From positions 124,001 through 188,000 of the IMG/VR virus record IMGVR_UViG_3300011934_000017: a stretch of DNA of 64,000 nt. One strand, 5' to 3'. The notes under the pieces are model-generated. The model did no database searches. It was not told the DNA's origin and saw only the letters and a list, made by a program, of their open reading frames with translations. This document shows, piece by piece, positions 2,500-35,306 of the stretch. Every line of letters begins with the position of its first letter. Position 1 is the stretch's first letter. The position numbers were made by a program, and so were the translations under genes.

Positions 2500-3990
2500 T
2501 TATTCGTCGTCGTCTTCATCCGATACTGCCGCAGATTTTTTGTTGGTATTGGAAGCACGTTTGAAGTCTACCAAATACTCATAGCCCTTTCCAGTTGCTA
2601 CCTGTTTTCGTAGAAAGTTTCGGAACAACACAGGCTTTTTCATATTCAGTGCATCGCACAGTGTACGAATGTCGGAGCGATCACCTTCAATCATGGTTTT
2701 GAACTGCGTCCATGTCAGTGTGACACCGTCTAAAGGACTCTTGAAGTCTATGTGGTAAGTCTTTTCTTTGCCTGTAGACTTATCACGTTTCGTAACATCA
2801 AAACCACTCAGGAATTTGATCTTCTTACGGGTGCCTCCAACTTGACCTGTCATCTTCAGATATTGATACGCATCCCATGTCGCACAAAAGCCAGTAGCAT
2901 CACCTTCAGCATTCTCAACAACAAGGCGCATCGTGATGGTCTGGTTAGGAACACCCCCAAGCTTGTTCTTGTGGCTGCGAATCTTGATATAGCGGTACGT
3001 ATCATTACCGTCTGCAATAACAGACTCTTCTTCTTCCAACATACCTTTACCGTGCGGAATGCTGACAGAAGACATACGTAGGCGAACGTCTGAGTAAAAC
3101 TTCAGTGCGTCACCGCAAGGCTCAGTCTCGGAAGGACCATACATTGCCATAGGTACTTTACGAAGCTGATTAACGCCGAGTACCACGATACGCTTGGAGC
3201 GCATCATGCCTTTCACACGCTTTAGGCCGTCGGAGAACATACGTGCTTGAAGCGCCAGCGACTTATCGCCTTCTTCTTTCTCGTCTGCAATACCAGGAAG
3301 CATGGCAGGATAAGAGTCAGTAAGAACGATAGCCTGAATACCTCCATCTTCAGCAGGAACACGAAAGCGATTGGTCTTGGTGAAGTATTTCTTGTCGTAT
3401 AAACCTTTAAGCGCTTTCTGATTCTCTTTGGTGTTATCGTAAATGAAATACCATTTGCCGTTCATTCGCACTTTGTCAGGCAAGACTTTACCCATCTTAG
3501 ACAGGTAGTTAAAGAATTTCTCGCCTGTGTCAGGAGCGTAGTAACGAACACGTGGTGCTACTACCCATTCTCCTGTCACGTCATCACGAACACCGAAAAC
3601 TTTCTCTACATCGCCGCTAACACCCATAGAGTGCATGATGTTTTCAATGTAGTCAGCTTGCGAACTACCTTCATAGTCAAAGTAGCTTGCAAAGCCTTTG
3701 AAAGCTTTCTGACCCATGATAGACGCAAGAATGGTCATGGCTGTTGTAGACTTACAGGACTGCTCGCCGCCGAAGCATGTATACCAACCACCACCTAACA
3801 TGCCTCCAGCTAACGCAACATCTAGCGATAGCAGGCCGGTACTGAATCGAGGTTCGTCTTTATCAATAGCCATAGAAGAGAGTCGAAACTTCTTTTCCAT
3901 GCTATCAATTTCAGCATCAATATGGGAGTAGGGATTAAACGCAGGAACCTCAGCTTCTTCAACACTTGTGCTTTTCTTACGCTTTGCCAT
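2500..3990 (-). CDS. recA: RecA/UvsX-like recombinase
   Basis: STG..SLDVAL.GG, Walker A GGEQSCKST, LTDS, ALQARMFS, GVNQLR, GDALKFYSDVRLR. Confidence 0.93.
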   Translation of the reverse strand: MAKRKKSTSVEEAEVPAFNPYSHIDAEIDSMEKKFRLSSMAIDKDEPRFSTGLLSLDVALAGGMLGGGWYTCFGGEQSCKSTTAMTILASIMGQKAFKGFASYFDYEGSSQADYIENIMHSMGVSGDVEKVFGVRDDVTGEWVVAPRVRYYAPDTGEKFFNYLSKMGKVLPDKVRMNGKWYFIYDNTKENQKALKGLYDKKYFTKTNRFRVPAEDGGIQAIVLTDSYPAMLPGIADEKEEGDKSLALQARMFSDGLKRVKGMMRSKRIVVLGVNQLRKVPMAMYGPSETEPCGDALKFYSDVRLRMSSVSIPHGKGMLEEEESVIADGNDTYRYIKIRSHKNKLGGVPNQTITMRLVVENAEGDATGFCATWDAYQYLKMTGQVGGTRKKIKFLSGFDVTKRDKSTGKEKTYHIDFKSPLDGVTLTWTQFKTMIEGDRSDIRTLCDALNMKKPVLFRNFLRKQVATGKGYEYLVDFKRASNTNKKSAAVSDEDDDE

Positions 3991-4377: not shown

Positions 4378-5481
4378 TTATTCATCCCAGTCGTCTTCAT
4401 CATCATCAAAGGATACTTTCTTCTTCGATGATTTCTTTTTCTTTACAGGCTTTTTCTTCTTCTTCTTAGGTGCTGGCTCGTCTTCATCTTCATCGTCGTC
4501 CAGATCAACCTTCTTTTTCTTTACAGGCTTTTTCTTTTTCTTTACAGGCTTTTTCTTTTTCTTCTTAGGTGCTGGCTCGTCCTCGTCTTCATCTTCATCG
4601 TCGTCCAGATCAACCTTCTTTTTCTTCTTGGTTGACGCGGAAGAACCTAGATCAACATCGTCGTCCAAATCTTCATCCTCGTCATCACCGCCTTCAGACG
4701 TGGATTCGTCGCCAAGAATTTCCATGCGCTTGAAGTCTTCGGCAGCTTGCTTTTCAGACATACGACCTGCAATATCCAAAAGCTCTGGCGTTAGCTGCCA
4801 TACGAGGTACTCGCCTTCTTCATCGCTGAGTGGTGTGCGACCATCGACCTTGTCTGCACTGTACTTGTCAGAACCAGAAGCTTTCGGCTTGTACTTGATA
4901 TTCACGTCAACACCGTACTTCGGATGTGATATATCAAAAGCTTTCTTTTTACCTGTCTTCTTGTTCTTAACGATGTTGGTCTCACCGAGTTCTTGCATAC
5001 GGGAAACCATAGTATTGGTCAGACGGATAACGCGAACAGGAGTCCAAGACTTAGACTTGATATCTTTAAAGCCAGTCTTCTTTTCTTGCTTCGCCAATTC
5101 TGCTTTTCGAGCAGGTTCGTCTTCTTGTAGATCGCGGACGATAGCGTTCACAAGATAAAAGTGCTCGCTACGCATGGTTGCTTCTTGACCACCTTCGGTA
5201 GACAAGTCACAATACGGGCAATGCGCATCAAGCGGCTCTTCTTCGTTTTCTGGATTAAAGCTTACACAGAAACGCGGAATGTTAACCAGCTTCTTTTCTT
5301 TGCCTGCGTAAATCTTGATCCAGTGACGGCGAACAGGTAGAATGTCGGCCTCTAAGAAACGCAGTTGTACCCACTCGTCGGGATGATCGGTAAACTTATA
5401 GATATCTATAAGCTCTTCAAGACGCAACGAATCACGGTTGCCTGTCTTGGGTTTCATTTTACTAAAGCCTTTACCAGACAT
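4378..5481 (-). CDS. single-stranded DNA-binding protein, T4 gp32-like, with blocky acidic/basic tail
   Basis: RFL...RRHW, C...CPYCDL, YLVNAIV pattern as in gp32; lies next to recA; duplicated DDDEDEDEPAPKKKKKKPVKKKK tail. Confidence 0.7.
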   Translation of the reverse strand: MSGKGFSKMKPKTGNRDSLRLEELIDIYKFTDHPDEWVQLRFLEADILPVRRHWIKIYAGKEKKLVNIPRFCVSFNPENEEEPLDAHCPYCDLSTEGGQEATMRSEHFYLVNAIVRDLQEDEPARKAELAKQEKKTGFKDIKSKSWTPVRVIRLTNTMVSRMQELGETNIVKNKKTGKKKAFDISHPKYGVDVNIKYKPKASGSDKYSADKVDGRTPLSDEEGEYLVWQLTPELLDIAGRMSEKQAAEDFKRMEILGDESTSEGGDDEDEDLDDDVDLGSSASTKKKKKVDLDDDEDEDEDEPAPKKKKKKPVKKKKKPVKKKKVDLDDDEDEDEPAPKKKKKKPVKKKKSSKKKVSFDDDEDDWDE

Positions 5482-5534: not shown

Positions 5535-6551
5535 TTAAGAAATGCCTTCTTCTCGCATCTGGTTTTGCATCAAGGCCAATTCGTCGGCGGTAAAATATTC
5601 ACCTATGTCAAGGTAAAGCCTAGCACACCCAGAAATATCAGCATGTTTAGCTAAGTACATAACGATAGAGTCCGTTTCACCTCGTTCAAAATCGTGGTGT
5701 ATATCTTGGCCGTCACCTAAGACATTGTGCAAGCTTTTGGAGTCGTCTTCACCTGCAAGTTCATCTAGGCTGACGCTGTGATTCATAAAGCCGGTGTTTT
5801 TCTCTGCAATCTTTTTACGGTGGGATTGAGGAACGACATAGGCAATACCGTATTCGTGCTCTACCGTATTGCAGGTCTGAGCATTGAGAATCCACCAATT
5901 TAGATAGGAAGTCAAGGCACCCTTGTTACTATCATACTTATCAATCGCCAGCAAAATGCTTTTAAGAATAGACTGCCGAACATCATGAAAATCAAAATTA
6001 CTTCCGTTTGCATCTATGTGGATTTTGGCTTGCTTGGAAGAAAGCTTTAGATAGTGGTCTAACACTTTGGATCGACATTCATAAAATTTGGCTAAATAGG
6101 AAGCACTGATAGACATAATGCGATAAAAGCCTTGTCTGTCTGTGCGAAGCTGTGAAGCCTGTTTGTCCAATCTTTGCTTTAACTGGAGCCTGTGATTTCT
6201 ATCTGTCGTCATCATAGTGCTGTAGTCAGACAGGTAGTTAGGAAACATACGAAGAACTCTGCCTACGAAAACGTGCAGGAAGGAGCGTTCAAGCCTAGCT
6301 TCTCGTAGGAGTTCGAATTTCTCTGAACGATCCTCAGATACAAGAAACCTACATAGAATTTCTACAGTACGCTCTCTAGGCAAAGAACTGGGTTTTCTTT
6401 TCCTGTTAGCAGACACCAGCACTAAAATATAGGAGACCTGTTCATCAAAAACATCAGAGTTTAATATTATGGGCTCTAAAGCTTTATACAAGAACAGGTC
6501 CATCACTTGCTGGATCTGCTCACCTGTCAAATTTTTAGCAAGCAGAGTCAT
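5535..6551 (-). CDS. phage-encoded sigma70-family RNA polymerase sigma factor
   Basis: Region-2-like DVRQ...LLAIDKYDSNKGALTSYLNWWI; region-3-like SVSLDE. Confidence 0.78.
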   Translation of the reverse strand: MTLLAKNLTGEQIQQVMDLFLYKALEPIILNSDVFDEQVSYILVLVSANRKRKPSSLPRERTVEILCRFLVSEDRSEKFELLREARLERSFLHVFVGRVLRMFPNYLSDYSTMMTTDRNHRLQLKQRLDKQASQLRTDRQGFYRIMSISASYLAKFYECRSKVLDHYLKLSSKQAKIHIDANGSNFDFHDVRQSILKSILLAIDKYDSNKGALTSYLNWWILNAQTCNTVEHEYGIAYVVPQSHRKKIAEKNTGFMNHSVSLDELAGEDDSKSLHNVLGDGQDIHHDFERGETDSIVMYLAKHADISGCARLYLDIGEYFTADELALMQNQMREEGIS

Positions 6552-11450: not shown

Positions 11451-12155
11451 CTAGCTCCTGTCTATCGAAAACTCCAAAGAGGAAGAAACTAAGTCTTTGG
11501 CGAGGAGTGGTTTATCATGAATGATGCGGCTATCAAACAACGCCATGTATTCATCGTTATCACACACTATGGAAAGAACACGGTTTTTAGCCATCATAAA
11601 GAATGTTTCTGCACCGTTCGCTTCTATGATATCCTGAAGTCTTTTAACTCCTTTCAAAAGGGCTTCTGTGTCAGGATGGGTCTTTAGCAGAATCAAGTGA
11701 TCATACGGAATGGAGCCGGTAGCGGCAAGGTAGTTGTATGTCTTCCAGTGCAAGTCTAGCTTCCACTCCAGTCGTTGGCAAAGCTGGTGCGCATCATGAT
11801 CTTCATACGTAGCAAACCAACGTTGTGGTTCTACCTTTTTCTTCAAGTGACGTATGAACGCAAGCTCTCTGCGGGCTTCGTCAAGGCAAGGCTGTGCGGT
11901 CACCTTACGCGCTTTCTGCTCGTCAATGTTACACTGCGCCAGCATCTTTCCGCTCTTAGACTCTGTATCATCTGAGAGGATAACCTTCGAAGCCAATACT
12001 TTTGCCTGTGCTCGCAAACTTTCAGCCATAGAAGATTGAATGGCAAAGTCTCGATCCTCTTCCAATTCACACAGCACACGGTAGGCTTCATCGCACGTAT
12101 GGCAATTACTCAGAATAAGGTGAGCAATTTCAAACCTTGAATGTTTCCAATGCAT
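11451..12155 (-). CDS. hypothetical helical protein (start trimmed to MHWKHS)
   Basis: ATG at 12155 with SD GGAG. Confidence 0.7.
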   Translation of the reverse strand: MHWKHSRFEIAHLILSNCHTCDEAYRVLCELEEDRDFAIQSSMAESLRAQAKVLASKVILSDDTESKSGKMLAQCNIDEQKARKVTAQPCLDEARRELAFIRHLKKKVEPQRWFATYEDHDAHQLCQRLEWKLDLHWKTYNYLAATGSIPYDHLILLKTHPDTEALLKGVKRLQDIIEANGAETFFMMAKNRVLSIVCDNDEYMALFDSRIIHDKPLLAKDLVSSSLEFSIDRS

Positions 12156-12319
12156 AGTTCTCTCCAAAGCAAAATACCCGTGATGAAAGCAATTCAAAAG
12201 CTAAACTCGAAAGTTCGTTTTGATATTGACTCCCAAACACGGGTATTTATTAACAAGCACCAACATGGTCAGTGCTTGTTGTACCGGCAACGATTTTTAA
12301 TTAGTTTGAAGCGGCAAGC

Positions 12320-12796
12320 TTATAGCTCGTCGTCAAAATCATCGAAGTCGTCAGACTTTGCAGCTTTCTTGGCTTTCTTAGTCTTCTTGCCTTTGGCAGG
12401 AGCAGCTTCATCGGCAGCTTTCTTGGCTTTCTTAGTCTTCTTGCCTTTGGCGGGTGCTTCTTCTTCAGCAGCAGCTTTCTTACCTTTCTTGCCTTTCTTG
12501 CCTTTGGCGGGTGCTTCTTCTTCAGCAGCAGCTTTCTTGCCTTTACCTTTCTTGCCTTTGGCAGGCTTTTCTTCGGCAGCAGCTTTCTTGCCTTTACCTT
12601 TCTTGCCTTTGGCAGGAGCGGCGGCAGCTTCTTCGCCATTTTCTACGACTTCAAGTTGAGCCTGCACGTTTACGATTGCTTCATCGATTTTATTAGCCGC
12701 TTGGCCTAGACTCTTTTCTGAAGCTTGCAAGGCGCGAAGTTCTTTCTTGAGACGTGAAGCTTCGGCGCGCTGTTGAAGTTCTACTGTTTTAGCCAT
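12320..12796 (-). CDS. histone H1-like Lys/Ala-rich protein with tandem repeats
   Basis: Five AAxxxPAKGKKxKKxKK units after an N-terminal coiled coil; ends DDFDDFDDEL. Confidence 0.8.
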   Translation of the reverse strand: MAKTVELQQRAEASRLKKELRALQASEKSLGQAANKIDEAIVNVQAQLEVVENGEEAAAAPAKGKKGKGKKAAAEEKPAKGKKGKGKKAAAEEEAPAKGKKGKKGKKAAAEEEAPAKGKKTKKAKKAADEAAPAKGKKTKKAKKAAKSDDFDDFDDEL

Positions 12797-12852
12797 TTTC
12801 TACTCTCCGAGATTTACTGCAAAAATACAACGTATGTTGTAAGAAGGGATCA

Positions 12853-12880
12853 AAGAACGGAAACAACTTCCGTTCTTTTT
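12853..12880. terminator. hairpin between acidic-protein gene and H1-like gene
   Basis: AAAGAACGGAA-ACAAC-TTCCGTTCTTT. Confidence 0.6.
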
Positions 12881-12887
12881 ATTTACA
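12880..12887 (-). promoter_or_regulatory. TGTAAATA motif
   Basis: Intergenic, upstream of the H1-like gene. Confidence 0.55.
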
Positions 12888-12921
12888 CTTTACCAGGTTT
12901 CTAAAATTAGACGATTAGGAA

Positions 12922-13314
12922 TTATTCGTCCCAGTCATCGTCATCGTCTTCATCTTCATCATCTTCATCATCTTCATCATCTTCATCATCTTCATCATCT
13001 TCATCTTCATCATCTTCATCGTCGTCGAGGTCTTCATCGTCGTCGAGGTCTTCGTCCTCGTCTTCGTCCTCGTCCTCTTCGTCAGCTTCATCTTCATCTT
13101 CATCTTCATCGTCATCGCCGAAGTCATCATCCTCTTCATCATCACCGGAATCATCTTCACCGTCTGGAACGGATTCGGCAACAGCGTCGGTAAGCGTGTC
13201 TAGCGTATAACCAGCAGCCTGGGCTTCGGACAATAGAGTAAGAATTGCGGAAGCAAGCAGTTCTTCCAAGTTCAGTTTTGGAGCTTTTGCTGCGGTTTTC
13301 TTTGACTTCGCCAT
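12922..13314 (-). CDS. highly acidic protein (poly-D/E C-terminal half)
   Basis: Basic N-terminus, short helix, long D/E tract built of 9-nt tandem repeats; ends DDDDWDE. Confidence 0.8.
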   Translation of the reverse strand: MAKSKKTAAKAPKLNLEELLASAILTLLSEAQAAGYTLDTLTDAVAESVPDGEDDSGDDEEDDDFGDDDEDEDEDEADEEDEDEDEDEDLDDDEDLDDDEDDEDEDDEDDEDDEDDEDDEDEDDDDDWDE

Positions 13315-13390
13315 TTTTAATTCCTCAATACTGATAAGATTTAGTCGAGCATATCGACAGATAGTTTTTACACTTTTACTTCAACTTACT

Positions 13391-14059
13391 TCAGAGGTCT
13401 TCGTCATCTAAGTCGTCGTCTTCTTCCTCGTCGTCGTCTTCATCTTCCTCGTCGTCGAGGTCTTCATCTTCCTCGTCGTCGAGGTCTTCATCTTCCTCGT
13501 CGTCCTCGTCCTCCTCTTCATCTTCGAGGTCTTCATCTTCTTCATCAAAATCTTCTTCTACAGGCTTTTTCTTCTTAGCCTTTCGTGAGGACTTTTCGTT
13601 ATCTTCTTCGTCCGCAAAGACTTCGATGTGGACGTTATCGTTTGAAAAGATTGTAGTAATCTCTCCAGTAACGGAATCTTTTACCGTCAAGGTACCTGTA
13701 GCAGCATCGCGGCGAACAAGACCTTTCACCGTGTACATAAGCTCAGACTTGATAAGGGTGATGCTTGACGGCTCACCTGGCTTACCGAAAACTTTGACAA
13801 CATCGCGGATTAAAAATGTTGAAATGCGAGTCTTTTTTGAGGCGTTAGTTTTCTTATGACGAAACACAACGCCTGTTTCATCGTAGGAGACTAGAAAACC
13901 ATTTAGCGTTACAGGTACGCGCATAGCATAGACGTTTACGGTATGTACCGCTTTCTTCGCGTCTAAGCCTACACCAGCTTTGATGCCGCGTAGACGTTTT
14001 GAAATCTTTTCAGACTGTGATAGGCGACCACGAGGTGCGCGTGTTGCTGACTTAGCCAT
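13391..14059 (-). CDS. beta-rich protein with acidic tail
   Basis: Basic N-terminus, globular middle, D/E tract ending DDLDDEDL. Confidence 0.8.
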   Translation of the reverse strand: MAKSATRAPRGRLSQSEKISKRLRGIKAGVGLDAKKAVHTVNVYAMRVPVTLNGFLVSYDETGVVFRHKKTNASKKTRISTFLIRDVVKVFGKPGEPSSITLIKSELMYTVKGLVRRDAATGTLTVKDSVTGEITTIFSNDNVHIEVFADEEDNEKSSRKAKKKKPVEEDFDEEDEDLEDEEEDEDDEEDEDLDDEEDEDLDDEEDEDDDEEEDDDLDDEDL

Positions 14060-14105
14060 TTGAGCTTCCTTCAGATTAAAGAAAATTGCTTGTCTTACGA
14101 ATTAG

Positions 14106-14113
14106 TATTTACA
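14106..14113 (-). promoter_or_regulatory. TGTAAATA motif
   Basis: Between terminator hairpin 14124-14143 and start codon 14059. Confidence 0.6.
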
Positions 14114-14123
14114 CTTTATTGCA

Positions 14124-14143
14124 GAAGGGGCAGATGCCCCTTC
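14124..14143 (-). terminator. GC hairpin after the 14146-15366 gene
   Basis: GAAGGGGCA-GA-TGCCCCTTC. Confidence 0.6.
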
Positions 14144-14145
14144 GA

Positions 14146-15366
14146 TCATACCATCAAAAGAATGTCGGAATTTTCAGGCATCAGCAGTGCGGCTGCTTGC
14201 TGTGCAGTGTTGCCAGCAGGGAACAAACGGTAGATATCGTTATCCAGATCAACCGCACAGTGATGCAAGTAATTCGTGGAGATAATAACCGCTTCGCTTC
14301 CTTCTTCTACTGAGTAATGCTGTAGAAGTTCTACCACAGCAGAATCCAGCAGGTCTTCAGAACTAAAGGCGAAAGTCAGACGGAAGTCATCTTCTTCCAT
14401 GCTTGCGGCTTTAGCGTAGTTAGAAATGATACGCTGAATTGTAGCGAACGGTTTGATCAGCGAAGAGGAGCCTACAAGCAACGGCATCTTCACATTAACA
14501 GCGATGGTCGGACGAATTACGATAGTGCCGTCTTCATCGGTGTCAAACACTGCCCAGGTACCAAAGTGGTAAGATTCTTCGGCAGGAACTGTGTGCGTAG
14601 TAGGAGAAGCCGTAGCATTTACTTCTGTTACGCCAACAGAATCAAGGCCGTCTTCGTCGTCCTCTTCTGTGTCTTCAGTCTCTTCTTCCTGATGGAGTTC
14701 AATGAACTTGAATACAGGGTTCGAAGGATCAGGAAAGGCACCGTACATGATATTGTTGATATCCGCATTCATGTGATCCATCATGGCAGTAACACGATCT
14801 TCTGTGTTAGAGGCAGGACCAAAGAACACAACACTACGGTCAGACATACGGTCAACGTAACGCGCTAGCTCTGCAAGGTTGTCACGAATAAGACCGTACG
14901 GGTTATTCTTTTTACCAATGCCTTTGCGCATCGGGCTGTTCACGCTGTAGAACGCATCACCGATACGAACAACATCAGGAACATCGGCAGTTTCGCGTGA
15001 AACGTTGAGCATGATACGCGGAGCGATTCGCAGGCGCACAGAATCATTGCCTGCAAACAGTTGATTCAAAGTAGGTGCTGTTTCTTCTTCTGCTTCGCCT
15101 TGTTCTGGTTCTTCATCAACTACCATTTGAGTTGATTCGAGTTCAATCTCTGGAACCGATTCAACAGGCTCGCGATCACCTTCTGCGAAAGAACGTGCGG
15201 ACATGGATACGCCGTTATTATCGCGCTTAGCCATAAGCTCTGAAATTTCGGCATCAACATCGCTGTTTTGGGTACGGTTTTGATCAGTCATTTTCTTTAC
15301 CTCTTTTTCGTTTTGGGATACCATCTGCTGGTGAAGCTGGGAGCGTCTACTGCTCACTCTGTCCAT
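14146..15366 (-). CDS. acidic hypothetical protein (alternative start 15291)
   Basis: 406-aa ORF; both ATGs have SD-like sequences. Confidence 0.75.
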   Translation of the reverse strand: MDRVSSRRSQLHQQMVSQNEKEVKKMTDQNRTQNSDVDAEISELMAKRDNNGVSMSARSFAEGDREPVESVPEIELESTQMVVDEEPEQGEAEEETAPTLNQLFAGNDSVRLRIAPRIMLNVSRETADVPDVVRIGDAFYSVNSPMRKGIGKKNNPYGLIRDNLAELARYVDRMSDRSVVFFGPASNTEDRVTAMMDHMNADINNIMYGAFPDPSNPVFKFIELHQEEETEDTEEDDEDGLDSVGVTEVNATASPTTHTVPAEESYHFGTWAVFDTDEDGTIVIRPTIAVNVKMPLLVGSSSLIKPFATIQRIISNYAKAASMEEDDFRLTFAFSSEDLLDSAVVELLQHYSVEEGSEAVIISTNYLHHCAVDLDNDIYRLFPAGNTAQQAAALLMPENSDILLMV

Positions 15367-15376
15367 GTAATGTCTC

Positions 15377-16870
15377 TCACTCGGAAGTAATGATATACAC
15401 TGGAAGCTTCTGTTCTTTATTTACACTTCCCAGTTCTACAGGTCGTGCAATGATTCCAGTGACCTTTTGATCGGGCATACGTTCTGCAAACTTCTCAACG
15501 TATTTACAGTAGGCTTTTTCTGTAAGCGGACCTCCTTTCGTTCTAAGAACCGAGTAGTCGTCAAACAAATTGTCGTTGGTCACAGCAAAACCGTTCGATT
15601 GCAAATGTCGATTAACGTGCTGACCGACAGGTATAGGACGAACGTTACCGCGACTGCCGTAGTAAATGTCAGAAGCGACAAACCTGAAGTAGTTTTCAGG
15701 GCTACGAATGAACTGGTCAATGCGATACTTTGCATTGGCGTCCCGCAGCGAATCGAGGGACCTCTTGAGCTTTTCAATTTTGCTCTGAAGCAGAGGGACA
15801 GCTTTGCCTTGCTTGATTATCTCAGCATTCTTTTTGATAGAAGAGGCGGCAGCTTTAAGTTCGGCTGCCTCTTCGTAATTCTTTTTACGCTTTGCGCGGC
15901 TGTGTTTCTTGCGCGCCTCTTCAAACAGGTCTTTCAGACGTTCTAATTCGGAACCGTCTTTGATTCTTTTAATCTTCTCTTTCTTCTGGTCAATGTCATC
16001 CAATAGATCAACTACTTCAGGGCAGTCTACTATGGGTCTACGTTCTTCGTTCAGAGTACCTAGAAAATAATCGAACAAGGCAGAGACGGACTTAACTTCA
16101 GGTAGATGCGACTTGATGCTGTCTTTCATCGAGTCTGGAACAGTCAGTGTACCAGCCACAACAAAATAGTTTGCAGGACCAGAAAGCAATTCTGATACGT
16201 TACCGTGATAATCAGGATTGATCAGACGTTTGCCGTTAGAGCCAATGTAATTCGGTATGTCTAACTTGATAGCAACATCAAGACTAACGCGCTCACCGTC
16301 TAGGCCACCGATACGCACGTCATACAGGTAACTGTAGCTTCGCTTTTCGGTCTTGTGAATACGATAAACCACAAACATGCGCAGACCTGCGAGAAGTGGT
16401 GATATCAAATAACTGCCTTCAGGCACACCTCGAACAGGCTCTTTTTTGTACTGAGGTAACATCGAGGTATAGATATCATCCAACATCGCAGGATAAGCGT
16501 ATTCTTCAAGATTCGAAATGTGTTTTTTCAAATCACTCTGGCATTCTTCAAACTCAAGAGGACCAGAACCAAGTAGCGCGAAGTTTGCCCACGACATACC
16601 GTGAGCGTCGCTTTCTGGAACACCAAGACCTACAGAATACATCATGGACAGCGTGTACATGTCATCAGTATTACCTGACGTGGCACCTTTAGCAATCTTT
16701 TCGACTACCGTCTTCGCAAGATTAGGCATAATATTTGCGGTCTCTTCATCGGTTAAGTAAAGAGGGAAGTCCAAGATAGAGCCAGGATACGGAGTATGAA
16801 CAACGCAGCGCTCGACCATGAACAAACGGTAAAAAAGATCGCTCAAAGGCTCATGTAACTGATCCATCAT
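15377..16870 (-). CDS. SEL1-repeat plus degenerate NAD-ligase adenylation-like domain with coiled-coil/UVR insert
   Basis: MYTLSMMYSVGLGVPESDAHGMSW (SEL1-like); SPLLAGLRMFVVY, VVAGTL, FVASD, LQSNGF, VTGIIAR in ligase-motif order; NYEEAAELK (UVR-like). Confidence 0.45.
   Translation of the reverse strand: MMDQLHEPLSDLFYRLFMVERCVVHTPYPGSILDFPLYLTDEETANIMPNLAKTVVEKIAKGATSGNTDDMYTLSMMYSVGLGVPESDAHGMSWANFALLGSGPLEFEECQSDLKKHISNLEEYAYPAMLDDIYTSMLPQYKKEPVRGVPEGSYLISPLLAGLRMFVVYRIHKTEKRSYSYLYDVRIGGLDGERVSLDVAIKLDIPNYIGSNGKRLINPDYHGNVSELLSGPANYFVVAGTLTVPDSMKDSIKSHLPEVKSVSALFDYFLGTLNEERRPIVDCPEVVDLLDDIDQKKEKIKRIKDGSELERLKDLFEEARKKHSRAKRKKNYEEAAELKAAASSIKKNAEIIKQGKAVPLLQSKIEKLKRSLDSLRDANAKYRIDQFIRSPENYFRFVASDIYYGSRGNVRPIPVGQHVNRHLQSNGFAVTNDNLFDDYSVLRTKGGPLTEKAYCKYVEKFAERMPDQKVTGIIARPVELGSVNKEQKLPVYIITSE
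15418..15425 (-). promoter_or_regulatory. TGTAAATA motif
   Basis: At the end of the upstream gene, about 50 nt before the 15366 start. Confidence 0.45.
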
Positions 16871-17234
16871 TTTTCTCCACCTGTTTTCGTATTCCGTTTA
16901 CATTGTCTGCAAACTCCAGAATAACATTAATCTCTTCGTCTTCTACTTGGTTATTTACAGCATTGAGAAACAGCTTTCTTTGCATGACACAAATGGCCTC
17001 GTCCGTAATGTGCGTACGGAACGCAACGAGGTCTTCATTAGCATGGATAAAAACATCATTCACCTGCTCTATGAATTTAGGTGAAAGATTGCGTTCACTC
17101 TTTTCAGTCGAGACAAATTCAGGAGAAAACAACACAGGTAAGGGATTGCCTGCTTGTGTTGTACCAGACTCTGATTCCATTATAGCAAAATAACGCTGTA
17201 GAAAAGTTCTTACACTAGGTGTACTCATTTTCAA
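16851..17234 (-). CDS. hypothetical protein
   Basis: 127-aa ORF in operon. Confidence 0.65.
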   Translation of the reverse strand: MKMSTPSVRTFLQRYFAIMESESGTTQAGNPLPVLFSPEFVSTEKSERNLSPKFIEQVNDVFIHANEDLVAFRTHITDEAICVMQRKLFLNAVNNQVEDEEINVILEFADNVNGIRKQVEKNDGSVT

Positions 17235-17268
17235 ACTCCAAAAGAGGCCGAAGCCCCTTGAACGTGTT

Positions 17269-17640
17269 TTACATTTTTGATGCGTCTTTCAGCTTTTTCA
17301 GCGGTGTAATCTTCAGCTTGATAGATGCAGGCTTGGCTTTGAACGTTGTCTCTTCACCGGTGAACGGGCTGATACCTTTACGCGCTTTCTTTGCAGGCAC
17401 TTTCTTGCTGGTAATCTTGAACAGACCGGACAGCATGAACTCACCGATACCACGCTTGCGCACATGACCAAGCATTGTTTCTTCTAGTGCATCCATGACC
17501 TTCTTAACATCTTTCTTGTCCAGCTCAGTCTTCTCTGCCAGATGCTCCAGAAGCTGAGTCTTAGTCATCTTTTCTTTGATGGCCTTGGGAGCAGTTGCTT
17601 TGGTAGCTGCTTTGGCAGTTGCTTTTGGCTTAGTAGTCAT
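17269..17640 (-). CDS. HU/IHF-family DNA-binding protein with Ala/Lys N-terminal tail
   Basis: MTKTQLLEHLAEKTELDKKDV...GLFKI...ARKGISPFTGE...FKAKPA. Confidence 0.92.
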   Translation of the reverse strand: MTTKPKATAKAATKATAPKAIKEKMTKTQLLEHLAEKTELDKKDVKKVMDALEETMLGHVRKRGIGEFMLSGLFKITSKKVPAKKARKGISPFTGEETTFKAKPASIKLKITPLKKLKDASKM

Positions 17641-17671
17641 TTTGAATTCCTTAATAAAATATAAAAGTTGC

Positions 17672-17947
17672 TTAGTGTTGCAGGTCGTTCAGGAGTTTCA
17701 CAATCTTTTCTAGGATGTCACTGCCGTAGCTCTCTACAATATGCGTCTTAGGTGGGTCGCACCGATTAGCGTGAAGCATATCCTCCAGACGCGACACCTC
17801 AGGCTTCAAACTTTTTTGCACCCGTGCCTTGACGCGATGCATGTCATCAGCATGGTGCACTTCGTTTATTTGGAGTTGGTCTTTCAAACTTTTTACCTCA
17901 CGCTCCAATTCCTCGATACGCGCTTGGGCTTCAGCTAATCTACTCAT
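17672..17947 (-). CDS. small coiled-coil protein (start trimmed to MSRLAE)
   Basis: The longer track ORF includes hairpin 17975-17994. Confidence 0.65.
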   Translation of the reverse strand: MSRLAEAQARIEELEREVKSLKDQLQINEVHHADDMHRVKARVQKSLKPEVSRLEDMLHANRCDPPKTHIVESYGSDILEKIVKLLNDLQH

Positions 17948-17974
17948 GACAGTTTCTTGAAAAGTTTGCAGATG

Positions 17975-17994
17975 GGCGGGGCATCTGCCCCGCC
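17975..17994 (-). terminator. GC hairpin after the 18005-19582 gene
   Basis: GGCGGGGCA-TC-TGCCCCGCC. Confidence 0.55.
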
Positions 17995-18004
17995 GTGTCA
18001 CTAC

Positions 18005-19582
18005 TTACAGGGCGTCGTCAAAATCATCGAAGTCGTCTTCGTCTTCGTCTTCGTCTTCGTCTTCGTCTTCGTCTTCAAACTCTTCCTCGTCTTCTTCTAG
18101 GTCATCTTCGTCCTCGTCTTCAAATTCTTCTTCATCGTCTTCATCTTCAAACTCTTCCTCGTCGTCTGCTTCGTCCTCGTCTTCGTCCTCCTCTAGGTCA
18201 TCTTCAAATTCTTCTTCATCGTCGAGGTCCAGATCATCTTCTACCTCTTCTACCGTGTCTTCGATAATCTCCATGCGTACAACTTTTGCTAGATCAACCA
18301 GCTTGACCTCTTCAGTGTCGAGCACGAACAGAACAACTTTTGACTTGGCGTCGGAGAAGCCGATAACGAGGGCTTCACTGCCACGGTACTCAAGCTTGGT
18401 ACCAATGTCAACTTCATCGCCAAGCTTCGGCTCGATCACATCGTCAAAGTTTGCATCCCAGCCTTCGATGGCGCGCGCAATCTTTTTGGTGTCTAACGCA
18501 TCACCTACGATAGCTGCAATCTTTTCTAGGCGAGTATCGTCTTCAGTAGACGATTCTTCGGCTTCAGTCATTGCGGCCGCGTATGCCTCAATATCTTCTT
18601 CAGAGGCGTTGGTGGGCAACAGACCGATTTGAAGGGTCAGGCGTTCTTCGTTGTACATGCCGCCGGTAGTCGCTACGGTCAGGTCAAGACCTGTCAGGTC
18701 TTTCAAGATGTTGCCAATGTTGTCACGCACCGCGTCTTCAATCTTTTTAGTCATCGCATCGTTGAAAGTTGACACAGGCTTCAGCTTCTTGGTGTCACCG
18801 CTTGCGCCACGCTTGCGGCGCTTGATGCCAGAGCTTTCTTTATCTTCGGCAGCGGGCTGCTTGGGCTGCTTGGGTGCTTTCTTTTTGCTGTTCAAAAGTT
18901 CACGCAGCTCGGCGACTTTGACACCACGTGCTTCAGTGCGATCTTCGATCTTACCAGCATCGACCAGTGCTGTGATAAGCTCCTTGCGTGTCATCTTTTT
19001 CTCAGAAGACGCTGCAGGCTGCTTCGGCTGCTTAGGTGCTTTCTTTTTCGCGTGAAGTTCACGCAGTTCCTCGATGGACACGCCTTTGGCTACGCGACGG
19101 TTGCTAATCTTGCCAGCATCTACCAGCGCTGTAATCAGTTCTGTACGTGTCATCTTTTTCTCAGAAGAGGCAGCAGGCTGCTTCGGCTGACGTGGCTGCT
19201 TGGGCTTCTTCTTAGACAACTTTTCTACCATGCTGCGAAGTTCTGTGATGAGAATGCCTTTGGAGTCGGAGCGCTTTTCAAACTTCTTGGCTTCAACGAG
19301 GGCGGTGATGCAATCGCGGCGAGTCATCTTGCTTGCGTCATTTTTCATATCTTTATCTCCGGTTGTCTTGGGTGTAGTTGTCTTGGGTGCATCTTTTGCA
19401 GGGCTGTCGCCAAGCTGCACAAGACCACGTCCTTTCTTTTTCACGTCAGCGGCTTGCACAACGATGCCGCCTTTGGTCTTGTAAGATACGCGACCGACCT
19501 TTGCGATGCGATCTTTTGAATCGTCTGCCAGGGTGATGCTCATGCCTTCGAATGACTGGTCTGCTTTTTGACGTGTAGCCAT
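18005..19582 (-). CDS. repeat protein: three helix-loop-helix (HeH/Rho-N-like) units with PKQP linkers and an acidic tail
   Basis: KMTRxxxITALVxAxKxxxRxxxxGxxxxELR x3; ends DDFDDFDDAL; ATG at 19582 with SD GAGAG. Confidence 0.8.
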   Translation of the reverse strand: MATRQKADQSFEGMSITLADDSKDRIAKVGRVSYKTKGGIVVQAADVKKKGRGLVQLGDSPAKDAPKTTTPKTTGDKDMKNDASKMTRRDCITALVEAKKFEKRSDSKGILITELRSMVEKLSKKKPKQPRQPKQPAASSEKKMTRTELITALVDAGKISNRRVAKGVSIEELRELHAKKKAPKQPKQPAASSEKKMTRKELITALVDAGKIEDRTEARGVKVAELRELLNSKKKAPKQPKQPAAEDKESSGIKRRKRGASGDTKKLKPVSTFNDAMTKKIEDAVRDNIGNILKDLTGLDLTVATTGGMYNEERLTLQIGLLPTNASEEDIEAYAAAMTEAEESSTEDDTRLEKIAAIVGDALDTKKIARAIEGWDANFDDVIEPKLGDEVDIGTKLEYRGSEALVIGFSDAKSKVVLFVLDTEEVKLVDLAKVVRMEIIEDTVEEVEDDLDLDDEEEFEDDLEEDEDEDEADDEEEFEDEDDEEEFEDEDEDDLEEDEEEFEDEDEDEDEDEDEDDFDDFDDAL

Positions 19583-19617: not shown

Positions 19618-19709
19618 GAACGTTAACTAGCACCGTAACCAAATTTCTATCTGCTCGTTTTGGCTCGCTGCTACATCTTCATTATATCACATCTACAACC
19701 GCTCTGCAA
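19618..19709 (-). promoter_or_regulatory. sigma70-type promoter plus 28-bp element, copy 2
   Basis: TTGCAG-17-TATAAT (19686-19681); element 19645-19618. Confidence 0.85.
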
Positions 19710-19797
19710 CAACTTTCTGCTGTGGTGGTGTGAGGTGTGCTGTGGTGCAGTCGAATCAAAGATTGCACGGTGAGGGGGCGCTGCCCCCTCTGGTATA

Positions 19798-20169
19798 TCA
19801 GCTTTCTAGTTCGCGTACGGTCTGTGCCACGTAGCTGTCTTCTCCGAGCAAGGTCGCTAATCTTTTCGCCAGCGCTACATGACCAGGAAAATCTTTCCAG
19901 GACTTGGTGCGACCCTCAAAGACCACATCAACGTAGGATGCCAGCGCTGAAAAGTTCTTGCGCTTGTGGCCATGCAGAGAAAAGACTTGCAGGTACGGAC
20001 CAGATACTTGGCTGTGGTTTTCGATCATTTCGAAAATGTAGCCTCGGTCCTCAACGATGATAACGTGGGTGTGCTCACCCTGATCATCAACGTCTTCCAG
20101 TTCAAACTTTTCACCGCCCTGTGCTACCAGTGCTTCTTCCATTGCTAAGATGTCGGCTAGCTGAGTCAT
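19798..20169 (-). CDS. early protein, paralog family member A
   Basis: GGEKFELE.D..G...VI / AL...VD....KSW...HVALA.RL. Confidence 0.8.
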   Translation of the reverse strand: MTQLADILAMEEALVAQGGEKFELEDVDDQGEHTHVIIVEDRGYIFEMIENHSQVSGPYLQVFSLHGHKRKNFSALASYVDVVFEGRTKSWKDFPGHVALAKRLATLLGEDSYVAQTVRELES

Positions 20170-20319: not shown

Positions 20320-20694
20320 TTAGCGCATGTGGAGCGCTTCTTTTGCCTCGGGTACAAAATTCGCATCAGGAGCAAACTCTACCAGGCGTACAACTAGAGC
20401 CACGTGGGTGCTAGATTCTACCCACGACTTGATGCCGGGTAGCTGTGCTGGTGAGGCCCAGAGAAGATCAAGTGCCGACACCAATGAGTCAATATCATCA
20501 TAGGCATCCGTCAGTTTAAAAGTTCGTATTCTCTGGCTGTCACCGTCTGCGGACGATTCGAACAACACCGCACTGCCGTCTTTCGGAAGCAGGATCACGG
20601 CAGTATAATCACCGGTCTGATCTGGGCATTCTAGTTCGAACCGCTCACCGCCGATCTGAAGCAGTGCGTTTTCCATAGCTGTCATGAAATGCAT
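20320..20694 (-). CDS. early protein, paralog family member B
   Basis: GGERFELE.PD..G.YT.VI / LD..W...KSW...HVALV.RL. Confidence 0.8.
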   Translation of the reverse strand: MHFMTAMENALLQIGGERFELECPDQTGDYTAVILLPKDGSAVLFESSADGDSQRIRTFKLTDAYDDIDSLVSALDLLWASPAQLPGIKSWVESSTHVALVVRLVEFAPDANFVPEAKEALHMR

Positions 20695-20825: not shown

Positions 20826-21155
20826 CTATGAGGCGGTCTTTACAATGCTTGGTATGCTCGATTCGGGTACGATTTCTGCTAGACGTTGGGCTAACTTGAC
20901 GTGGATGGGACAGTCTAACCAGCAGCGCTTACCACTGTTTTTTGACCCCCAGAAAAGATCGACGTGCCAGGCCAGTGCTTCGAAATTGCTTCGGGATGTG
21001 GCTGCATCTTTTAAAAAGATCACCTCTTGAACGCTACAATCATCAAAATAGGTACAAGCTGTAGCTCTACCTTGACTGGCTTCTAACATGACCACGATGC
21101 AAAAATCGGAATCAATCTGCTCAAGGGCGAATCTTTCAAGGTGGTTAACGGGCAT
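20826..21155 (-). CDS. early protein, paralog family member C
   Basis: ERFALE...D / FEALA.HVD.FW...CW.D.P.HVKLA.RL. Confidence 0.75.
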   Translation of the reverse strand: MPVNHLERFALEQIDSDFCIVVMLEASQGRATACTYFDDCSVQEVIFLKDAATSRSNFEALAWHVDLFWGSKNSGKRCWLDCPIHVKLAQRLAEIVPESSIPSIVKTAS

Positions 21156-21165
21156 AATGGTTCTC

Positions 21166-21489
21166 CTAGTAGAGTAGTTTGCGAAGCGCTTTGGCGCCAG
21201 AACAAGAGGCAGTACCTAAGCCTGCCTCTAAGTGCAGGTAATGATAGAGTGCATCCCAATGAAAGGTACCTCTATCCGTTTCGGGATAGAACGCTTTAGT
21301 CGATAGAAAAGTCTGGCCGTTACTCTGAAGGTCTCCGTGAAGTACAACGACCGTACATTCTTCACTGTAGAAAACGTCTGTCTTGGGATACAAAAGCGGA
21401 CCTTCAATCGCGCTGTTTCGGAAGAGAAAGTGTGTGAAGTCAGTATCGGACTTCAAAGACTGGACTAACCTATCAATATGTTTTTGCAT
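21166..21489 (-). CDS. hypothetical protein
   Basis: 107-aa ORF in operon. Confidence 0.65.
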   Translation of the reverse strand: MQKHIDRLVQSLKSDTDFTHFLFRNSAIEGPLLYPKTDVFYSEECTVVVLHGDLQSNGQTFLSTKAFYPETDRGTFHWDALYHYLHLEAGLGTASCSGAKALRKLLY

Positions 21490-35230: not shown

Positions 35231-35252
35231 TAAAAACACACAGTTCAGACAC

Positions 35253-35280
35253 AAAAAAGGCCGCATTTGCGGCCTTTTTT
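35253..35280. terminator. bidirectional terminator
   Basis: AAAAAAGGCCGCA-TT-TGCGGCCTTTTTT. Confidence 0.9.
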
Positions 35281-35306
35281 GTGTCTATGGTAAATGCTTA
35301 GAAGAT

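What the first reader, a model, noticed from the sequence alone, without database searches (positions are those of the whole stretch)
12320..19582. Chromatin-like cluster: H1-like protein, two poly-acidic proteins, HU and a DNA-binding repeat protein in one block
Seen: within 7 kb lie a PAKGKK-repeat basic protein, two D/E-tract proteins, a tailed HU and a triple helix-loop-helix protein. Several have their own TGTAAATA motif. Established: poly-acidic proteins act as histone chaperones or DNA mimics, and HU and H1-like proteins compact DNA. Inference: this may be a histone-plus-chaperone style system for organising or shielding the phage chromosome.
Basis: partly seen in the sequence, partly recalled or inferred. 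Interest (0 to 1): 0.6.

Follow-up and report, generated by a model that had tools for sequence, protein, structure and literature searches.

The report
Charged DNA-protein gene block, jumbo phage
A 220-kb phage from a stromatolite metagenome, and its PaBG/Lu11-like relatives, keep a conserved block of extremely charged proteins (an HU, a lysine-rich H1-like protein, a 59% Asp/Glu protein and two acid-tailed proteins) beside their replication genes. The block most likely coats or organises replicating phage DNA, but nothing shows that the acidic proteins are histone chaperones.

Summary
All five proteins are at the stated coordinates on the minus strand, each with a ribosome-binding site, and their repeats are true tandem repeats. 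The block is syntenic in about 12 related jumbo-phage genomes (PaBG, Lu11, HRDY3 and metagenomic contigs).

Only HU is a family member by test (PF00216, 58.7 bits). The "H1-like" protein is H1-like by composition only: coiled coil, five PAKGKK repeats and a conserved DFxDF acidic tip, with no Hc1 or H1 match. The "triple helix-loop-helix" is a window-specific triplication with no SAP/HeH match.

One "poly-acidic" protein (222 aa) belongs to an uncharacterised family of 79 clusters. Most listed members have a basic N-arm, a beta domain, a K-rich linker and a short acidic tip. That is the tail logic of SSB or gp32, and the long acid tail here is a clade-specific expansion.

The phage's own SSB and RecA-like proteins nearby carry similar tips. 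TGTAAATA is a phage promoter core shared with replication and nucleotide-metabolism genes.

Best reading (about 0.42): these are middle-expressed DNA-coating or replisome-associated proteins whose acidic tails autoregulate binding or dock partners. The histone-plus-chaperone idea is neither excluded nor supported. I rate it a new variant of a known kind, of moderate interest.

The parts
12320..12796 (-). H1-like protein, 158 aa. Coiled coil (1-55), five PAKGKK repeats (56-147, net +24), acidic-aromatic tip SDDFDDFDDEL.
   Evidence: Orthologues in 12 loci all keep the coiled coil and the APAKGK start of the basic tract. Ten of the 12 keep a [FY]xDF[DE] tip. phrog_36478, E = 1.4e-13.
12880..12887 (-). 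TGTAAATA promoter core, 84 nt upstream of the H1-like ATG. The hairpin at 12852-12878 follows it directly.
12922..13314 (-). Poly-acidic protein, 130 aa. Basic MAKSKK... start, conserved helical hairpin (14-50), 80-aa D/E tail (net -71) ending DDWDE.
   Evidence: Orthologues in 10 loci have net charge -72 to -107.
13391..14059 (-). 222-aa protein. Basic N-arm (1-36, net +9), beta domain (37-150), K-rich linker, 54-aa acid tail ending DDEDL.
   Evidence: The family has 79 cluster representatives. The model reaches pLDDT about 90 over residues 40-150.
14106..14113 (-). TGTAAATA promoter core, 47 nt upstream of the 222-aa gene.
14146..15366 (-). 406-aa acidic protein of unknown function. It always precedes the 222-like gene, also in distant relatives.
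15418..15425 (-). TGTAAATA promoter core, 52 nt upstream of the 406-aa gene.
15377..16870 (-). 497-aa protein with one Sel1-like repeat and a coiled coil. Homologue of PaBG_00128.
16952..16959 (-). TGTAAATA promoter core, 82 nt upstream of the 497-aa gene.
16851..17228 (-). 125-aa acidic protein, unknown function. A conserved positional homologue is present in the relatives.
17269..17640 (-). HU-family protein, 123 aa, with a 24-aa K/A/T/P-rich N-terminal tail.
   Evidence: PF00216, 58.7 bits. PDB matches to HU 1hue, ASFV pA104R and SPO1 TF1. It is the only HU in the genome. HU occupies the same position in L006, L007, L008 and L013, with 40-70-aa basic tails.
17672..17947 (-). 91-aa coiled-coil protein between the 525-aa gene and HU.
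   Evidence: An 83-aa counterpart is present in L013.
18005..19582 (-). 525-aa multi-domain protein. N-terminal beta module, three helix-loop-helix repeats (85-240, net +21), alpha/beta mid domain (268-345), SH3/Tudor/KOW-like beta barrel (380-441), and an 84-aa acid tail with four EEFED motifs and the tip DDFDDFDDAL.
19681..19709 (-). Sigma-70-like promoter with an extended -10 (TTGCAG, 17 nt, TGaTATAAT), 99 nt upstream of the 525-aa ATG. Read by eye; the scan tool did not list it.
   Evidence: Sequence. Its -35 element matches only 3 of 6 positions, which is why one search missed it.
4378..5481 (-). Context: phage SSB (59% identical to the PaBG SSB; phrog_15004). It has a 112-aa tail of alternating K blocks and D/E blocks and ends FDDDEDDWDE.
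2500..3990 (-). Context: RecA/UvsX-like recombinase ending SDEDDDE.

Best explanation
The block encodes a set of abundant, non-sequence-specific nucleic-acid-binding proteins of a PaBG/Lu11-like jumbo phage. They are made together with the replication machinery and coat, bend or bridge replicating phage DNA.

Proposed roles:
- HU bends DNA.
- The H1-like protein oligomerises through its coiled coil and binds DNA through its lysine-rich repeats.
- The 222-aa protein binds through its basic arm and beta domain.
- The 525-aa protein binds through its basic helix-loop-helix region.

The acidic C-terminal tails and their conserved acid-plus-aromatic or acid-plus-leucine tips would work as they do in SSB, T4 gp32, T7 gp2.5, Hfq and HMGB1 (my own knowledge). 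They fold back on the protein's own basic surface to tune or limit binding. They also serve as docking motifs for shared partners, because the phage's SSB and RecA-like proteins carry similar tips. The free poly-acidic protein would act as a soluble polyanion that buffers or hands over the basic proteins.

Shown: the genes, the HU membership, the conservation, the tip motifs, and the shared promoter class.
Inferred: DNA binding by the non-HU proteins, the function of the tails, and the expression timing.
For: - HU membership is established.
- The block lies between the gyrase/exonuclease genes and the sigma/SSB/RecA genes, here and in PaBG, Lu11, HRDY3, L007 and L008. L013 shows the block itself but not these flanking genes. 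In distant relatives the order 406-like, 222-like, H1-like sits beside gyrB/topoisomerase genes, with a PC4-family gene just upstream.
- TGTAAATA precedes four genes of the block. It also precedes the SSB, dCMP deaminase, thymidylate-synthase-like, PolA, gyrB, primase and PD-(D/E)XK nuclease genes. The two sheath genes have none just upstream. The Lu11 record annotates the same core, AAAACTGTAAATAC, as a 'putative middle/late promoter'.
- Tips are conserved despite 25-40% overall identity. The H1-like tip [FY]xDF[DE] is present in 10 of 12 loci. The tip FDDFDD[EA]L ends the window protein and its four closest relatives in the 525 family (FDDFDD invariant). The SSB ends W-D-D in six genomes.
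- The 222 family has 79 cluster representatives. Most of those listed read 'basic arm, beta domain, K-rich linker, short acidic tip ending L/F/M/Y/W'. That is the SSB architecture.
- The beta domain is confidently modelled (pLDDT about 90). Its best, though weak, matches are Sm/Hfq/SH3-like barrels (Z up to 5.6).
- None of PaBG gp124-131 is among the 14 virion bands identified in PaBG (PMC7412058, Table 1).
Against: - No experiment exists on any member.
- Only HU is a tested family member.
- Fold matches for the 222 domain and the 525 C-terminal domain are below Z 8, the range the tool calls common arrangements. Foldseek found nothing significant.
- The tail of the 222 family is purely basic in Lu11 and HRDY3, so an acidic tail is not essential to that family.
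- The poly-acidic gene is missing from distant relatives.
- Synteny in collinear phage genomes is weak evidence of functional coupling.
- The PaBG virion proteome was shallow (14 gel bands).
- Expression timing is inferred from promoter motifs alone. No RNA data exist for this phage.
Confidence: 0.42

Rival explanations
1. Histone-plus-chaperone pair. The poly-acidic protein is a dedicated chaperone for the H1-like protein, HU, or both. It would form a disordered high-affinity polyelectrolyte complex like linker histone H1 with prothymosin-alpha. It would control loading and unloading on phage DNA, possibly driving a condensate that holds the phage chromosome.
For: - The poly-acidic and H1-like genes are adjacent in all 10 PaBG-clade loci.
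- Net charges are opposite and large: +16 to +31 against -72 to -107.
- The acid tails carry spaced F, L or W residues, for example four EEFED motifs. Acid-aromatic motifs of this kind occur in histone-chaperone tails (my own knowledge).
- The poly-acidic protein has a conserved small helical N-domain that could tether it.
Against: - There is no chaperone domain match, and no histone fold or H1 globular domain in the genome.
- Distant relatives keep the H1-like and 222-like genes without a poly-acidic gene.
- The charges of the two proteins correlate only weakly (r = 0.40, n = 10 non-independent genomes).
- The complex prediction of the two N-domains gave no answer.
- In the window the H1-like gene has its own promoter and a hairpin separates the two genes.
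Confidence: 0.18
2. Virion cargo. The charged proteins are packaged in the capsid with the DNA, as internal or ejection proteins or packing counter-ions, and are injected with it.
For: - Jumbo phages often package many internal proteins (my own knowledge).
- A recent paper on another jumbo lineage speculates that a phage H1-like protein (PF07432) compacts the genome during packaging (PMC12619734).
- The Lu11 record labels the promoter class 'middle/late'.
Against: - None of the PaBG homologues is among the identified virion bands.
- The genes lie in the replication module and share the promoter motif with replication genes, not with the sheath genes.
- A free 100-residue polyanion packed next to DNA is physically unattractive (inference).
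Confidence: 0.1
3. Anti-host weapons. The acidic proteins are DNA or SSB-tail decoys that soak up host nucleoid proteins, host SSB partners or defence nucleases. The basic proteins condense and silence the host chromosome.
For: - Acidic DNA-mimic proteins of phages are a known class, for example Ocr and Arn (my own knowledge).
- The poly-acidic tip DDWDE equals the phage SSB tip in the window and in L007.
- Chlamydial Hc1 shuts down transcription when over-expressed (cited in PMC12619734).
Against: - Known DNA mimics are folded proteins with fixed charge arrays. Here the one acid tail that was modelled is mostly low-confidence and lacks predicted secondary structure.
- PADLOC defence and anti-defence libraries were not searched.
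- Most genes of the block carry the middle promoter class rather than an early one, whereas take-over genes are usually early. The 525-aa gene does have a sigma-70-like promoter.
Confidence: 0.12
4. No system. These are independent low-complexity proteins that sit together only because the whole genome region is collinear among relatives. The acid tails are neutral, slippage-prone expansions.
For: - Acid tracts occur in five other proteins elsewhere in the genome, and clustering of tracts is not significant (p about 0.14).
- Tail lengths and even tail charge vary between relatives.
- The tails are encoded by tandem DNA repeats of 3 to 27 nt.
Against: - Tip motifs are conserved across deep divergence, while the tracts before them vary.
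- Acidic tips are concentrated in this region (p about 0.013, post hoc).
- The genes share a promoter class.
Confidence: 0.18

Closest known systems
HU/IHF family, including phage and viral members (SPO1 TF1, ASFV pA104R) and tailed HUs such as mycobacterial MDP1/HupB
   Same: The 123-aa protein matches PF00216 over 88 of 90 positions. It matches the solved HU 1hue, pA104R and TF1 by sequence. It and its orthologues carry K/A/P-rich disordered tails like MDP1 (PMC5974015 describes the MDP1 tail).
   Different: The tail is N-terminal and short here (24 aa), and N- or C-terminal in relatives. In the printed alignment, the segment that reads RNP in Bacillus HU (1hue) reads ISP here. HU is absent from this position in PaBG, Lu11 and HRDY3.
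Bacterial H1-like lysine-rich proteins (Chlamydia Hc1, PF07432; Pseudomonas AlgP and PhaF tails) and the H1-like proteins reported in 'moraphages'
   Same: A lysine/alanine/proline-rich repeat tract that is 86% K/A/P/G. PhaF-type proteins also combine an N-terminal helical oligomerisation part with a basic repeat tail (my own knowledge). H1-like proteins have been noted in jumbo phages (PMC12619734).
   Different: There is no match to PF07432 or to any H1 family. The protein carries a conserved acidic-aromatic C-terminal tip, which I do not know from those proteins.
C-terminal acidic tails of single-stranded-DNA-binding proteins (bacterial SSB tip DDDIPF, T4 gp32 A-domain, T7 gp2.5) and the acidic tip of Hfq
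   Same: The architecture is a nucleic-acid-binding domain, a disordered linker, and an acidic tip ending in a hydrophobic or aromatic residue. It is seen in the 222 family, the H1-like family, the 525 family and the phage's own SSB.
   Different: The tails here reach 54-84 residues of nearly pure D/E. The folded domains are not OB folds by any test. The function of the tips is untested.
Linker histone H1 with prothymosin-alpha, and nucleoplasmin-type acidic chaperones
   Same: A highly basic disordered DNA binder is encoded next to a highly acidic disordered protein of opposite charge.
   Different: There is no homology. The only hit is a low-complexity match of the SSB tail to the nucleoplasmin tail (E = 0.3). 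There is no nucleosome or histone fold to serve.
NusG/Spt5 (NGN plus KOW) and Tudor-like RNA-polymerase-binding domains (CarD, UvrD C-terminus)
   Same: The C-terminal beta barrel of the 525-aa protein (380-441) aligns to the Spt5 KOW, SMN Tudor, UvrD C-terminal and CarD domains. Z is 5.5-6.5 over 50-56 residues at rmsd 1.9-2.6. Foldseek's top weak hits are Spt4:Spt5 (E = 0.065).
   Different: The KOW (PF00467) and NGN (PF02357) models find nothing in the genome even at E up to 10. A profile search of the PDB sequences finds no NusG. Z below 8 may be only a common small barrel.

Membership tests
HU/IHF (PF00216, Bac_DNA_binding) | Match to the family model above the curated cut-off, covering the dimerisation helices and the beta arm. 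| tested here: met
   58.7 bits against a cut-off of 22.4, covering positions 1-88 of 90. Also matches 1hue (E = 1e-6), pA104R and TF1.
HU/IHF (PF00216) | Proline at the tip of the beta arm (intercalating residue). | tested here: met
   The alignment to 1hue places P of 'GISPFTGEE' opposite P of 'GRNPQTGEE'. The functional role of this residue is from my own knowledge.
Linker histone H1 / chlamydial Hc1 (PF07432) | Match to the family model. | tested here: not met
   The Pfam scan of the protein at E up to 0.1 gave only a sub-threshold RasGAP_C hit and no H1 or Hc1 family. PF07432 found nothing in the whole genome at E up to 1.
Linker histone H1 / Hc1 | Lysine/alanine/proline-rich basic repeat tract. 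| tested here: met
   Residues 56-147 have 35 K+R, net +24 and 86% K/A/P/G, with five PAKGKK repeats. This is composition only, not homology.
SAP / HeH / LEM / Rho-N helix-extension-helix DNA-binding motifs | Match to a family model. | tested here: not met
   Each repeat, and the three together, were scanned against Pfam at E up to 10. No SAP, HeH, LEM or Rho_N hit appeared.
SAP / HeH / LEM | Two helices joined by an extended loop, about 35 residues. | tested here: inconclusive
   The AlphaFold model gives helix, short helix, helix for repeats 2 and 3 at pLDDT 76-86.
Histone-fold proteins | Any histone-fold gene in the genome for a chaperone to serve. | tested here: not met
   PF00125 and PF00808 found nothing at E up to 1 in the 220-kb genome.
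Histone chaperones (nucleoplasmin, NAP, etc.) | A recognisable chaperone core domain. | tested here: not met
   No Pfam family was found for the poly-acidic protein or its N-domain. Hits for the 222-aa protein (CDC45, BUD22) are below cut-off and lie in the acid tract.
SSB-type acidic-tip proteins (architecture, not homology) | A disordered linker followed by a short acidic tip that ends in a hydrophobic or aromatic residue, conserved across the family. | tested here: met
   The 222 family has 79 cluster representatives, and most of those listed end in ...DDDDL...DDEDF...EDDFED...DDDWE and the like after a K-rich linker. The H1-like tips are and the SSB tips.
SSB-type acidic-tip proteins | An OB-fold or other proven single-strand-binding domain. 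| tested here: inconclusive
   The 222 beta domain gives only weak Sm/Hfq/SH3-like matches (Z up to 5.6). Foldseek, Pfam and a PDB profile search gave no match.
DNA-mimic proteins (Ocr, ArdA type) | A folded scaffold displaying acidic residues with DNA-like spacing. | tested here: inconclusive
   In the two modelled proteins (222 aa and 525 aa) the acid tails lack predicted secondary structure and score about pLDDT 33-55. The poly-acidic protein itself was not modelled. This does not exclude disordered mimicry.
NusG/Spt5 | NGN and KOW domains recognisable by model. | tested here: not met
   PF02357 and PF00467 found nothing at E up to 10. Only weak fold similarity was seen.

The most novel reading that the evidence does not exclude
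PaBG-like jumbo phages lack the genes of a phage nucleus as far as I know (not tested here). They may build a membrane-less, charge-driven compartment for their replicating chromosome. The components would be an H1-like polycation, a tailed HU, polyampholyte-tailed SSB and beta-domain proteins, and a dedicated polyanion of about 100 residues. The polyanion would act as an H1/prothymosin-alpha-style chaperone and set the fluidity and accessibility of this phage chromatin.
Probability: 0.12. Interest if true: 0.8.

Novelty: new variant of a known kind. Interest (0 to 1): 0.5.

Why it matters
Phage-encoded DNA-architectural proteins are known mainly as single cases (TF1, phi29 p6). Here a whole conserved set sits inside the replication module of one jumbo-phage lineage, and that lineage has culturable members (PaBG on P. 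aeruginosa PAO1, Lu11 on P. putida). The set comprises an HU, an H1-like polycation, a free polyanion and at least two uncharacterised protein families.

The work also defines an uncharacterised family of 79 sequence clusters, with a basic arm, a beta domain and an SSB-style acidic tip. It further shows that one short acidic-aromatic motif is shared by several replication-region proteins, which gives a concrete handle for finding a common partner.

If the polyanion/polycation pair works like H1 and prothymosin-alpha, it would be a bacterial-virus example of disordered polyelectrolyte chaperoning. If not, the block is still a useful annotation for a set of 'hypothetical proteins'.

Tried and rejected
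- Megablast of the block against 50,697 phage records found no match. Relatives are seen only at protein level.
- A single-protein scan of IMG/VR with the 497-aa protein found nothing.
- Pfam and PHROG scans of all nine block proteins named only HU. Scans of the isolated domains also found nothing.
- Fold searches gave nothing significant. For the 222 model see Foldseek on the PDB and VIA-align wide (Z up to 5.6). For the 525 model see Foldseek and VIA-align wide (Z up to 6.5, C-terminal barrel only). The 525 model is poor overall (mean pLDDT 54.8), so its N-terminal module and mid domain remain unassigned.
- ESM Atlas look-ups for the 222 domain and the H1-like protein gave no usable lead.
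- A word search with the H1-like coiled coil alone found nothing. Its orthologues are known only through synteny.
- The NusG/Spt5 idea for the 525-aa protein was rejected as membership. It is kept only as a weak fold lead.
- The complex prediction of H1-like(1-60) with poly-acidic(1-56) returned 'no answer' (score 0.02). It is not evidence either way.
- A profile of the 222 family against PDB sequences gave only chance-level rows.
- Charge co-variation between the H1-like and poly-acidic orthologues is weak (r = 0.40, n = 10, related genomes).
- The search for sequencing runs found only two DNA holders, both stromatolite metagenomes that may be the source, and no RNA.
- The plus-strand ORF 12141-12659 (172 aa) was rejected as a gene. 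It is the antisense reading of the lysine repeats, and the minus-strand protein is the one conserved in relatives.

Full report
**Where the window lies.** The window is bases 124,001-188,000 of a 220,237-bp IMG/VR virus record with direct terminal repeats. The only sequencing runs that hold the stretch are stromatolite metagenomes, and no RNA run was found. Nucleotide search finds no isolated relative. Protein search ties it to the jumbo Pseudomonas phages PaBG, Lu11 and HRDY3 at 22-59% identity.

**Observation.** Nine genes lie head to tail on the minus strand between 12320 and 19582. Each of the five named genes has a Shine-Dalgarno-like sequence before its ATG.

- H1-like protein (158 aa). 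It has a 55-residue predicted coiled coil, then a 92-residue tract of net charge +24 with five PAKGKK repeats. The DNA period is 54 nt, 4.7 copies, 88% matches. The tip is SDDFDDFDDEL.
- Poly-acidic protein (130 aa). It starts with a basic MAKSKK... segment, then a conserved helical hairpin, then 80 residues of net charge -71 ending DDWDE.
- 222-aa protein. It has a basic arm, a beta domain, a K-rich linker and a 54-residue acid tail.
- HU (123 aa). It scores 58.7 bits on PF00216 against a cut-off of 22.4. It matches solved HU, ASFV pA104R and SPO1 TF1.
- 525-aa protein. It has three 53-residue repeats with a 159-nt DNA period. Two of the units are modelled as helix-loop-helix at pLDDT 76-86; the first unit scores lower. 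It ends in an 84-residue acid tail with four EEFED motifs and the tip DDFDDFDDAL.

The longer plus-strand ORF over the H1-like gene is an antisense artefact.

**Chance.** Inside this genome alone the clustering is modest. Eight of 237 ORFs have a strong acid tract, and three of them fall within nine neighbouring genes (p about 0.14). Acidic C-terminal tips are more concentrated (p about 0.013). Both tests are post hoc. The weight of evidence comes from relatives.

**Conservation.**
- PaBG, Lu11 and HRDY3 keep the order: large beta-repeat/acid protein..., 497-like, 406-like, 222-like, poly-acidic, H1-like, 234-like.
- Five metagenomic contigs or IMG/VR records (L006, L007, L008, L013, and the Lu11-like L015/L017/L019) keep it too. 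L006 holds only part of it. The window-like ones also have HU directly after the 525-like gene.
- Two distant contigs (L011, L012) keep 406-like, 222-like and H1-like beside gyrase B and topoisomerase genes, with a PC4-family gene just upstream. They lack the poly-acidic gene.
- The helix-loop-helix unit is single-copy in the four closest homologues, so the triplication is specific to this phage.

**What the proteins are.** Only HU is a member of a named family. The H1-like protein matches no H1 or Hc1 model. The genome has no histone fold. The helix-loop-helix units match no SAP/HeH/LEM model.

The C-terminal barrel of the 525-aa protein resembles KOW/Tudor/CarD-type SH3-like barrels only weakly (Z 5.5-6.5; Foldseek E = 0.065 to Spt5). 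KOW and NGN models find nothing.

The 222-aa protein was the most informative.
- An exhaustive profile search with its N-domain found 79 cluster representatives. Those checked carry no informative name and most lie on large contigs.
- Most of those listed share one plan: a basic N-arm, a beta domain, a lysine-rich linker and a short acidic tip ending in L, F, M, Y or W.
- The beta domain models at pLDDT about 90. It has only weak Sm/Hfq/SH3-like matches and no Pfam or PDB sequence match.
- In Lu11 and HRDY3 the tail is purely basic. In PaBG it is basic with a short acidic tip. The long acid tail in the window is therefore a clade-specific expansion of a short tip, not the essence of the protein.

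**A shared tail code.**
- The H1-like tip [FY]xDF[DE] is kept in 10 of 12 loci.
- The tip FDDFDD[EA]L ends the window's 525-aa protein and its four closest relatives; FDDFDD is invariant.
- The phage SSB has a long tail of alternating lysine and acid blocks and ends in W-D-D-type tips in six genomes. It is 59% identical to the PaBG SSB and matches phrog_15004 at E = 1.5e-116.
- The poly-acidic protein ends DDWDE, like the SSB, in the window and in L007.
- The RecA-like protein ends SDEDDDE.

From my own knowledge, this is the pattern of bacterial SSB, T4 gp32 and T7 gp2.5/gp4. In those proteins the acidic, aromatic-ended tails both occupy the protein's own DNA-binding surface and dock replisome partners.

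**Regulation.** TGTAAATA is a real, oriented, intergenic motif.
- It occurs 18 times in the window against 2.15 expected and 34 times in the genome against about 6.7. 25 of the 34 lie within 150 nt upstream of a same-strand ATG.
- It precedes the H1-like, 222, 406 and 497 genes.
- Elsewhere it precedes the SSB, dCMP deaminase, a thymidylate-synthase-like gene, PolA, gyrase B, a DnaG-like primase and a PD-(D/E)XK nuclease.
- The two tail-sheath genes have none just upstream.
- The Lu11 record annotates the same core (AAAACTGTAAATAC) as 'putative middle/late promoter'.
- The 525-aa gene instead has a sigma-70-like extended -10 promoter, read by eye.

I infer that most of the block is expressed with the DNA-metabolism regulon. 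There are no RNA data to confirm this.

**Explanation.** I think the block most likely encodes DNA-coating and replisome-associated architectural proteins whose acidic tails autoregulate binding and dock partners (confidence about 0.42). The free polyanion would act as a buffer.

The rivals are:
- no system at all (0.18);
- anti-host decoys or condensers (0.12);
- virion cargo (0.10).

The PaBG virion proteome lists none of gp124-131, but it covered only 14 gel bands (PMC7412058). The complex prediction for the two N-domains gave no answer.

**Known or new.** Phage HUs are known (TF1). H1-like proteins have been noted in another jumbo lineage (PMC12619734). Acidic SSB tails are textbook. I found no description of this conserved block, of the H1-like family with its tip, of the free polyanion gene, or of the 222 family. 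I rate it a new variant of a known kind, of moderate interest, and directly testable in PaBG or Lu11.

**Limits.** The two structure jobs went to the 525-aa and 222-aa proteins, so the small domains could not be folded separately. Read laying was not used because only DNA contigs of the likely source samples exist.

Noticed in passing
window 19798-20169, 20320-20694, 20826-21155 (minus strand): Three tandem paralogous genes of 109-124 aa, 28-43% identical to each other (E = 1e-8 to 1e-12). They have no Pfam or PHROG match and lie directly upstream of the 525-aa gene. A fourth ORF, 21166-21489, has no significant BLAST match to them; in a forced alignment it shares only a few positions.
   Followed up: partly
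window 14127-14140, 17978-17991, and about 19775-19789: GC-rich palindromes (GGGGCAGATGCCCC, GGGGCATCTGCCCC, and a similar GGGGGCAGCGCCCCC). Each lies just 3' of a stop codon, of the 406-aa gene, the 525-aa gene and the gene at 19798. The pattern occurs twice against 0.04 expected. They are probably terminators or RNA-processing hairpins that split the block into transcription units.
   Followed up: partly
window 12852-12878: An 11-bp-stem hairpin lies immediately downstream of the TGTAAATA core of the H1-like gene, between the poly-acidic stop and the H1-like start. It could be a terminator for the upstream gene or a 5' stem-loop of the H1-like mRNA. This is unresolved.
   Followed up: no
window 54191-55084 (+): A 297-aa protein with pI 11.2 and 39% K+R, with no Pfam or PHROG match. 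It is another extreme polycation, encoded far from the block.
   Followed up: partly
window 4378-5481 (minus strand): The phage SSB carries a 112-residue tail of alternating lysine blocks and Asp/Glu blocks, with repeated F-D-D-D motifs. The feature is conserved in PaBG, Lu11, HRDY3, L007 and L008. It is unusual for an SSB and may promote self-association or condensation.
   Followed up: partly
G000:C1:110281-113613 (outside the window) and loci L008, L011: Inteins with LAGLIDADG domains interrupt large replication genes in this phage and its relatives: a 1110-aa gene here, RecA and another gene in L008, and gyrB and a topoisomerase gene in L011.
   Followed up: no
G000:C1:95230-96369 (outside the window): A thymidylate-synthase-family protein of 379 aa, in which the 266-position model is spread over residues 2-374, so it carries large insertions. 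A dCMP-deaminase gene lies at 34597-35418. This might point to modified bases, which would be relevant because the phage HU TF1 prefers hydroxymethyluracil DNA (my own knowledge).
   Followed up: no
window 5535-6551 (minus strand): A sigma-70-like factor, 52% identical to the PaBG RpoD-like protein, is encoded next to the SSB. It is a candidate reader of the TGTAAATA promoters.
   Followed up: no
loci L005, L006, L011, L012: A PC4-family (PF02229) single-strand-binding or coactivator-like small gene lies a few genes upstream of the block in several relatives. I did not look for it in the window.
   Followed up: no
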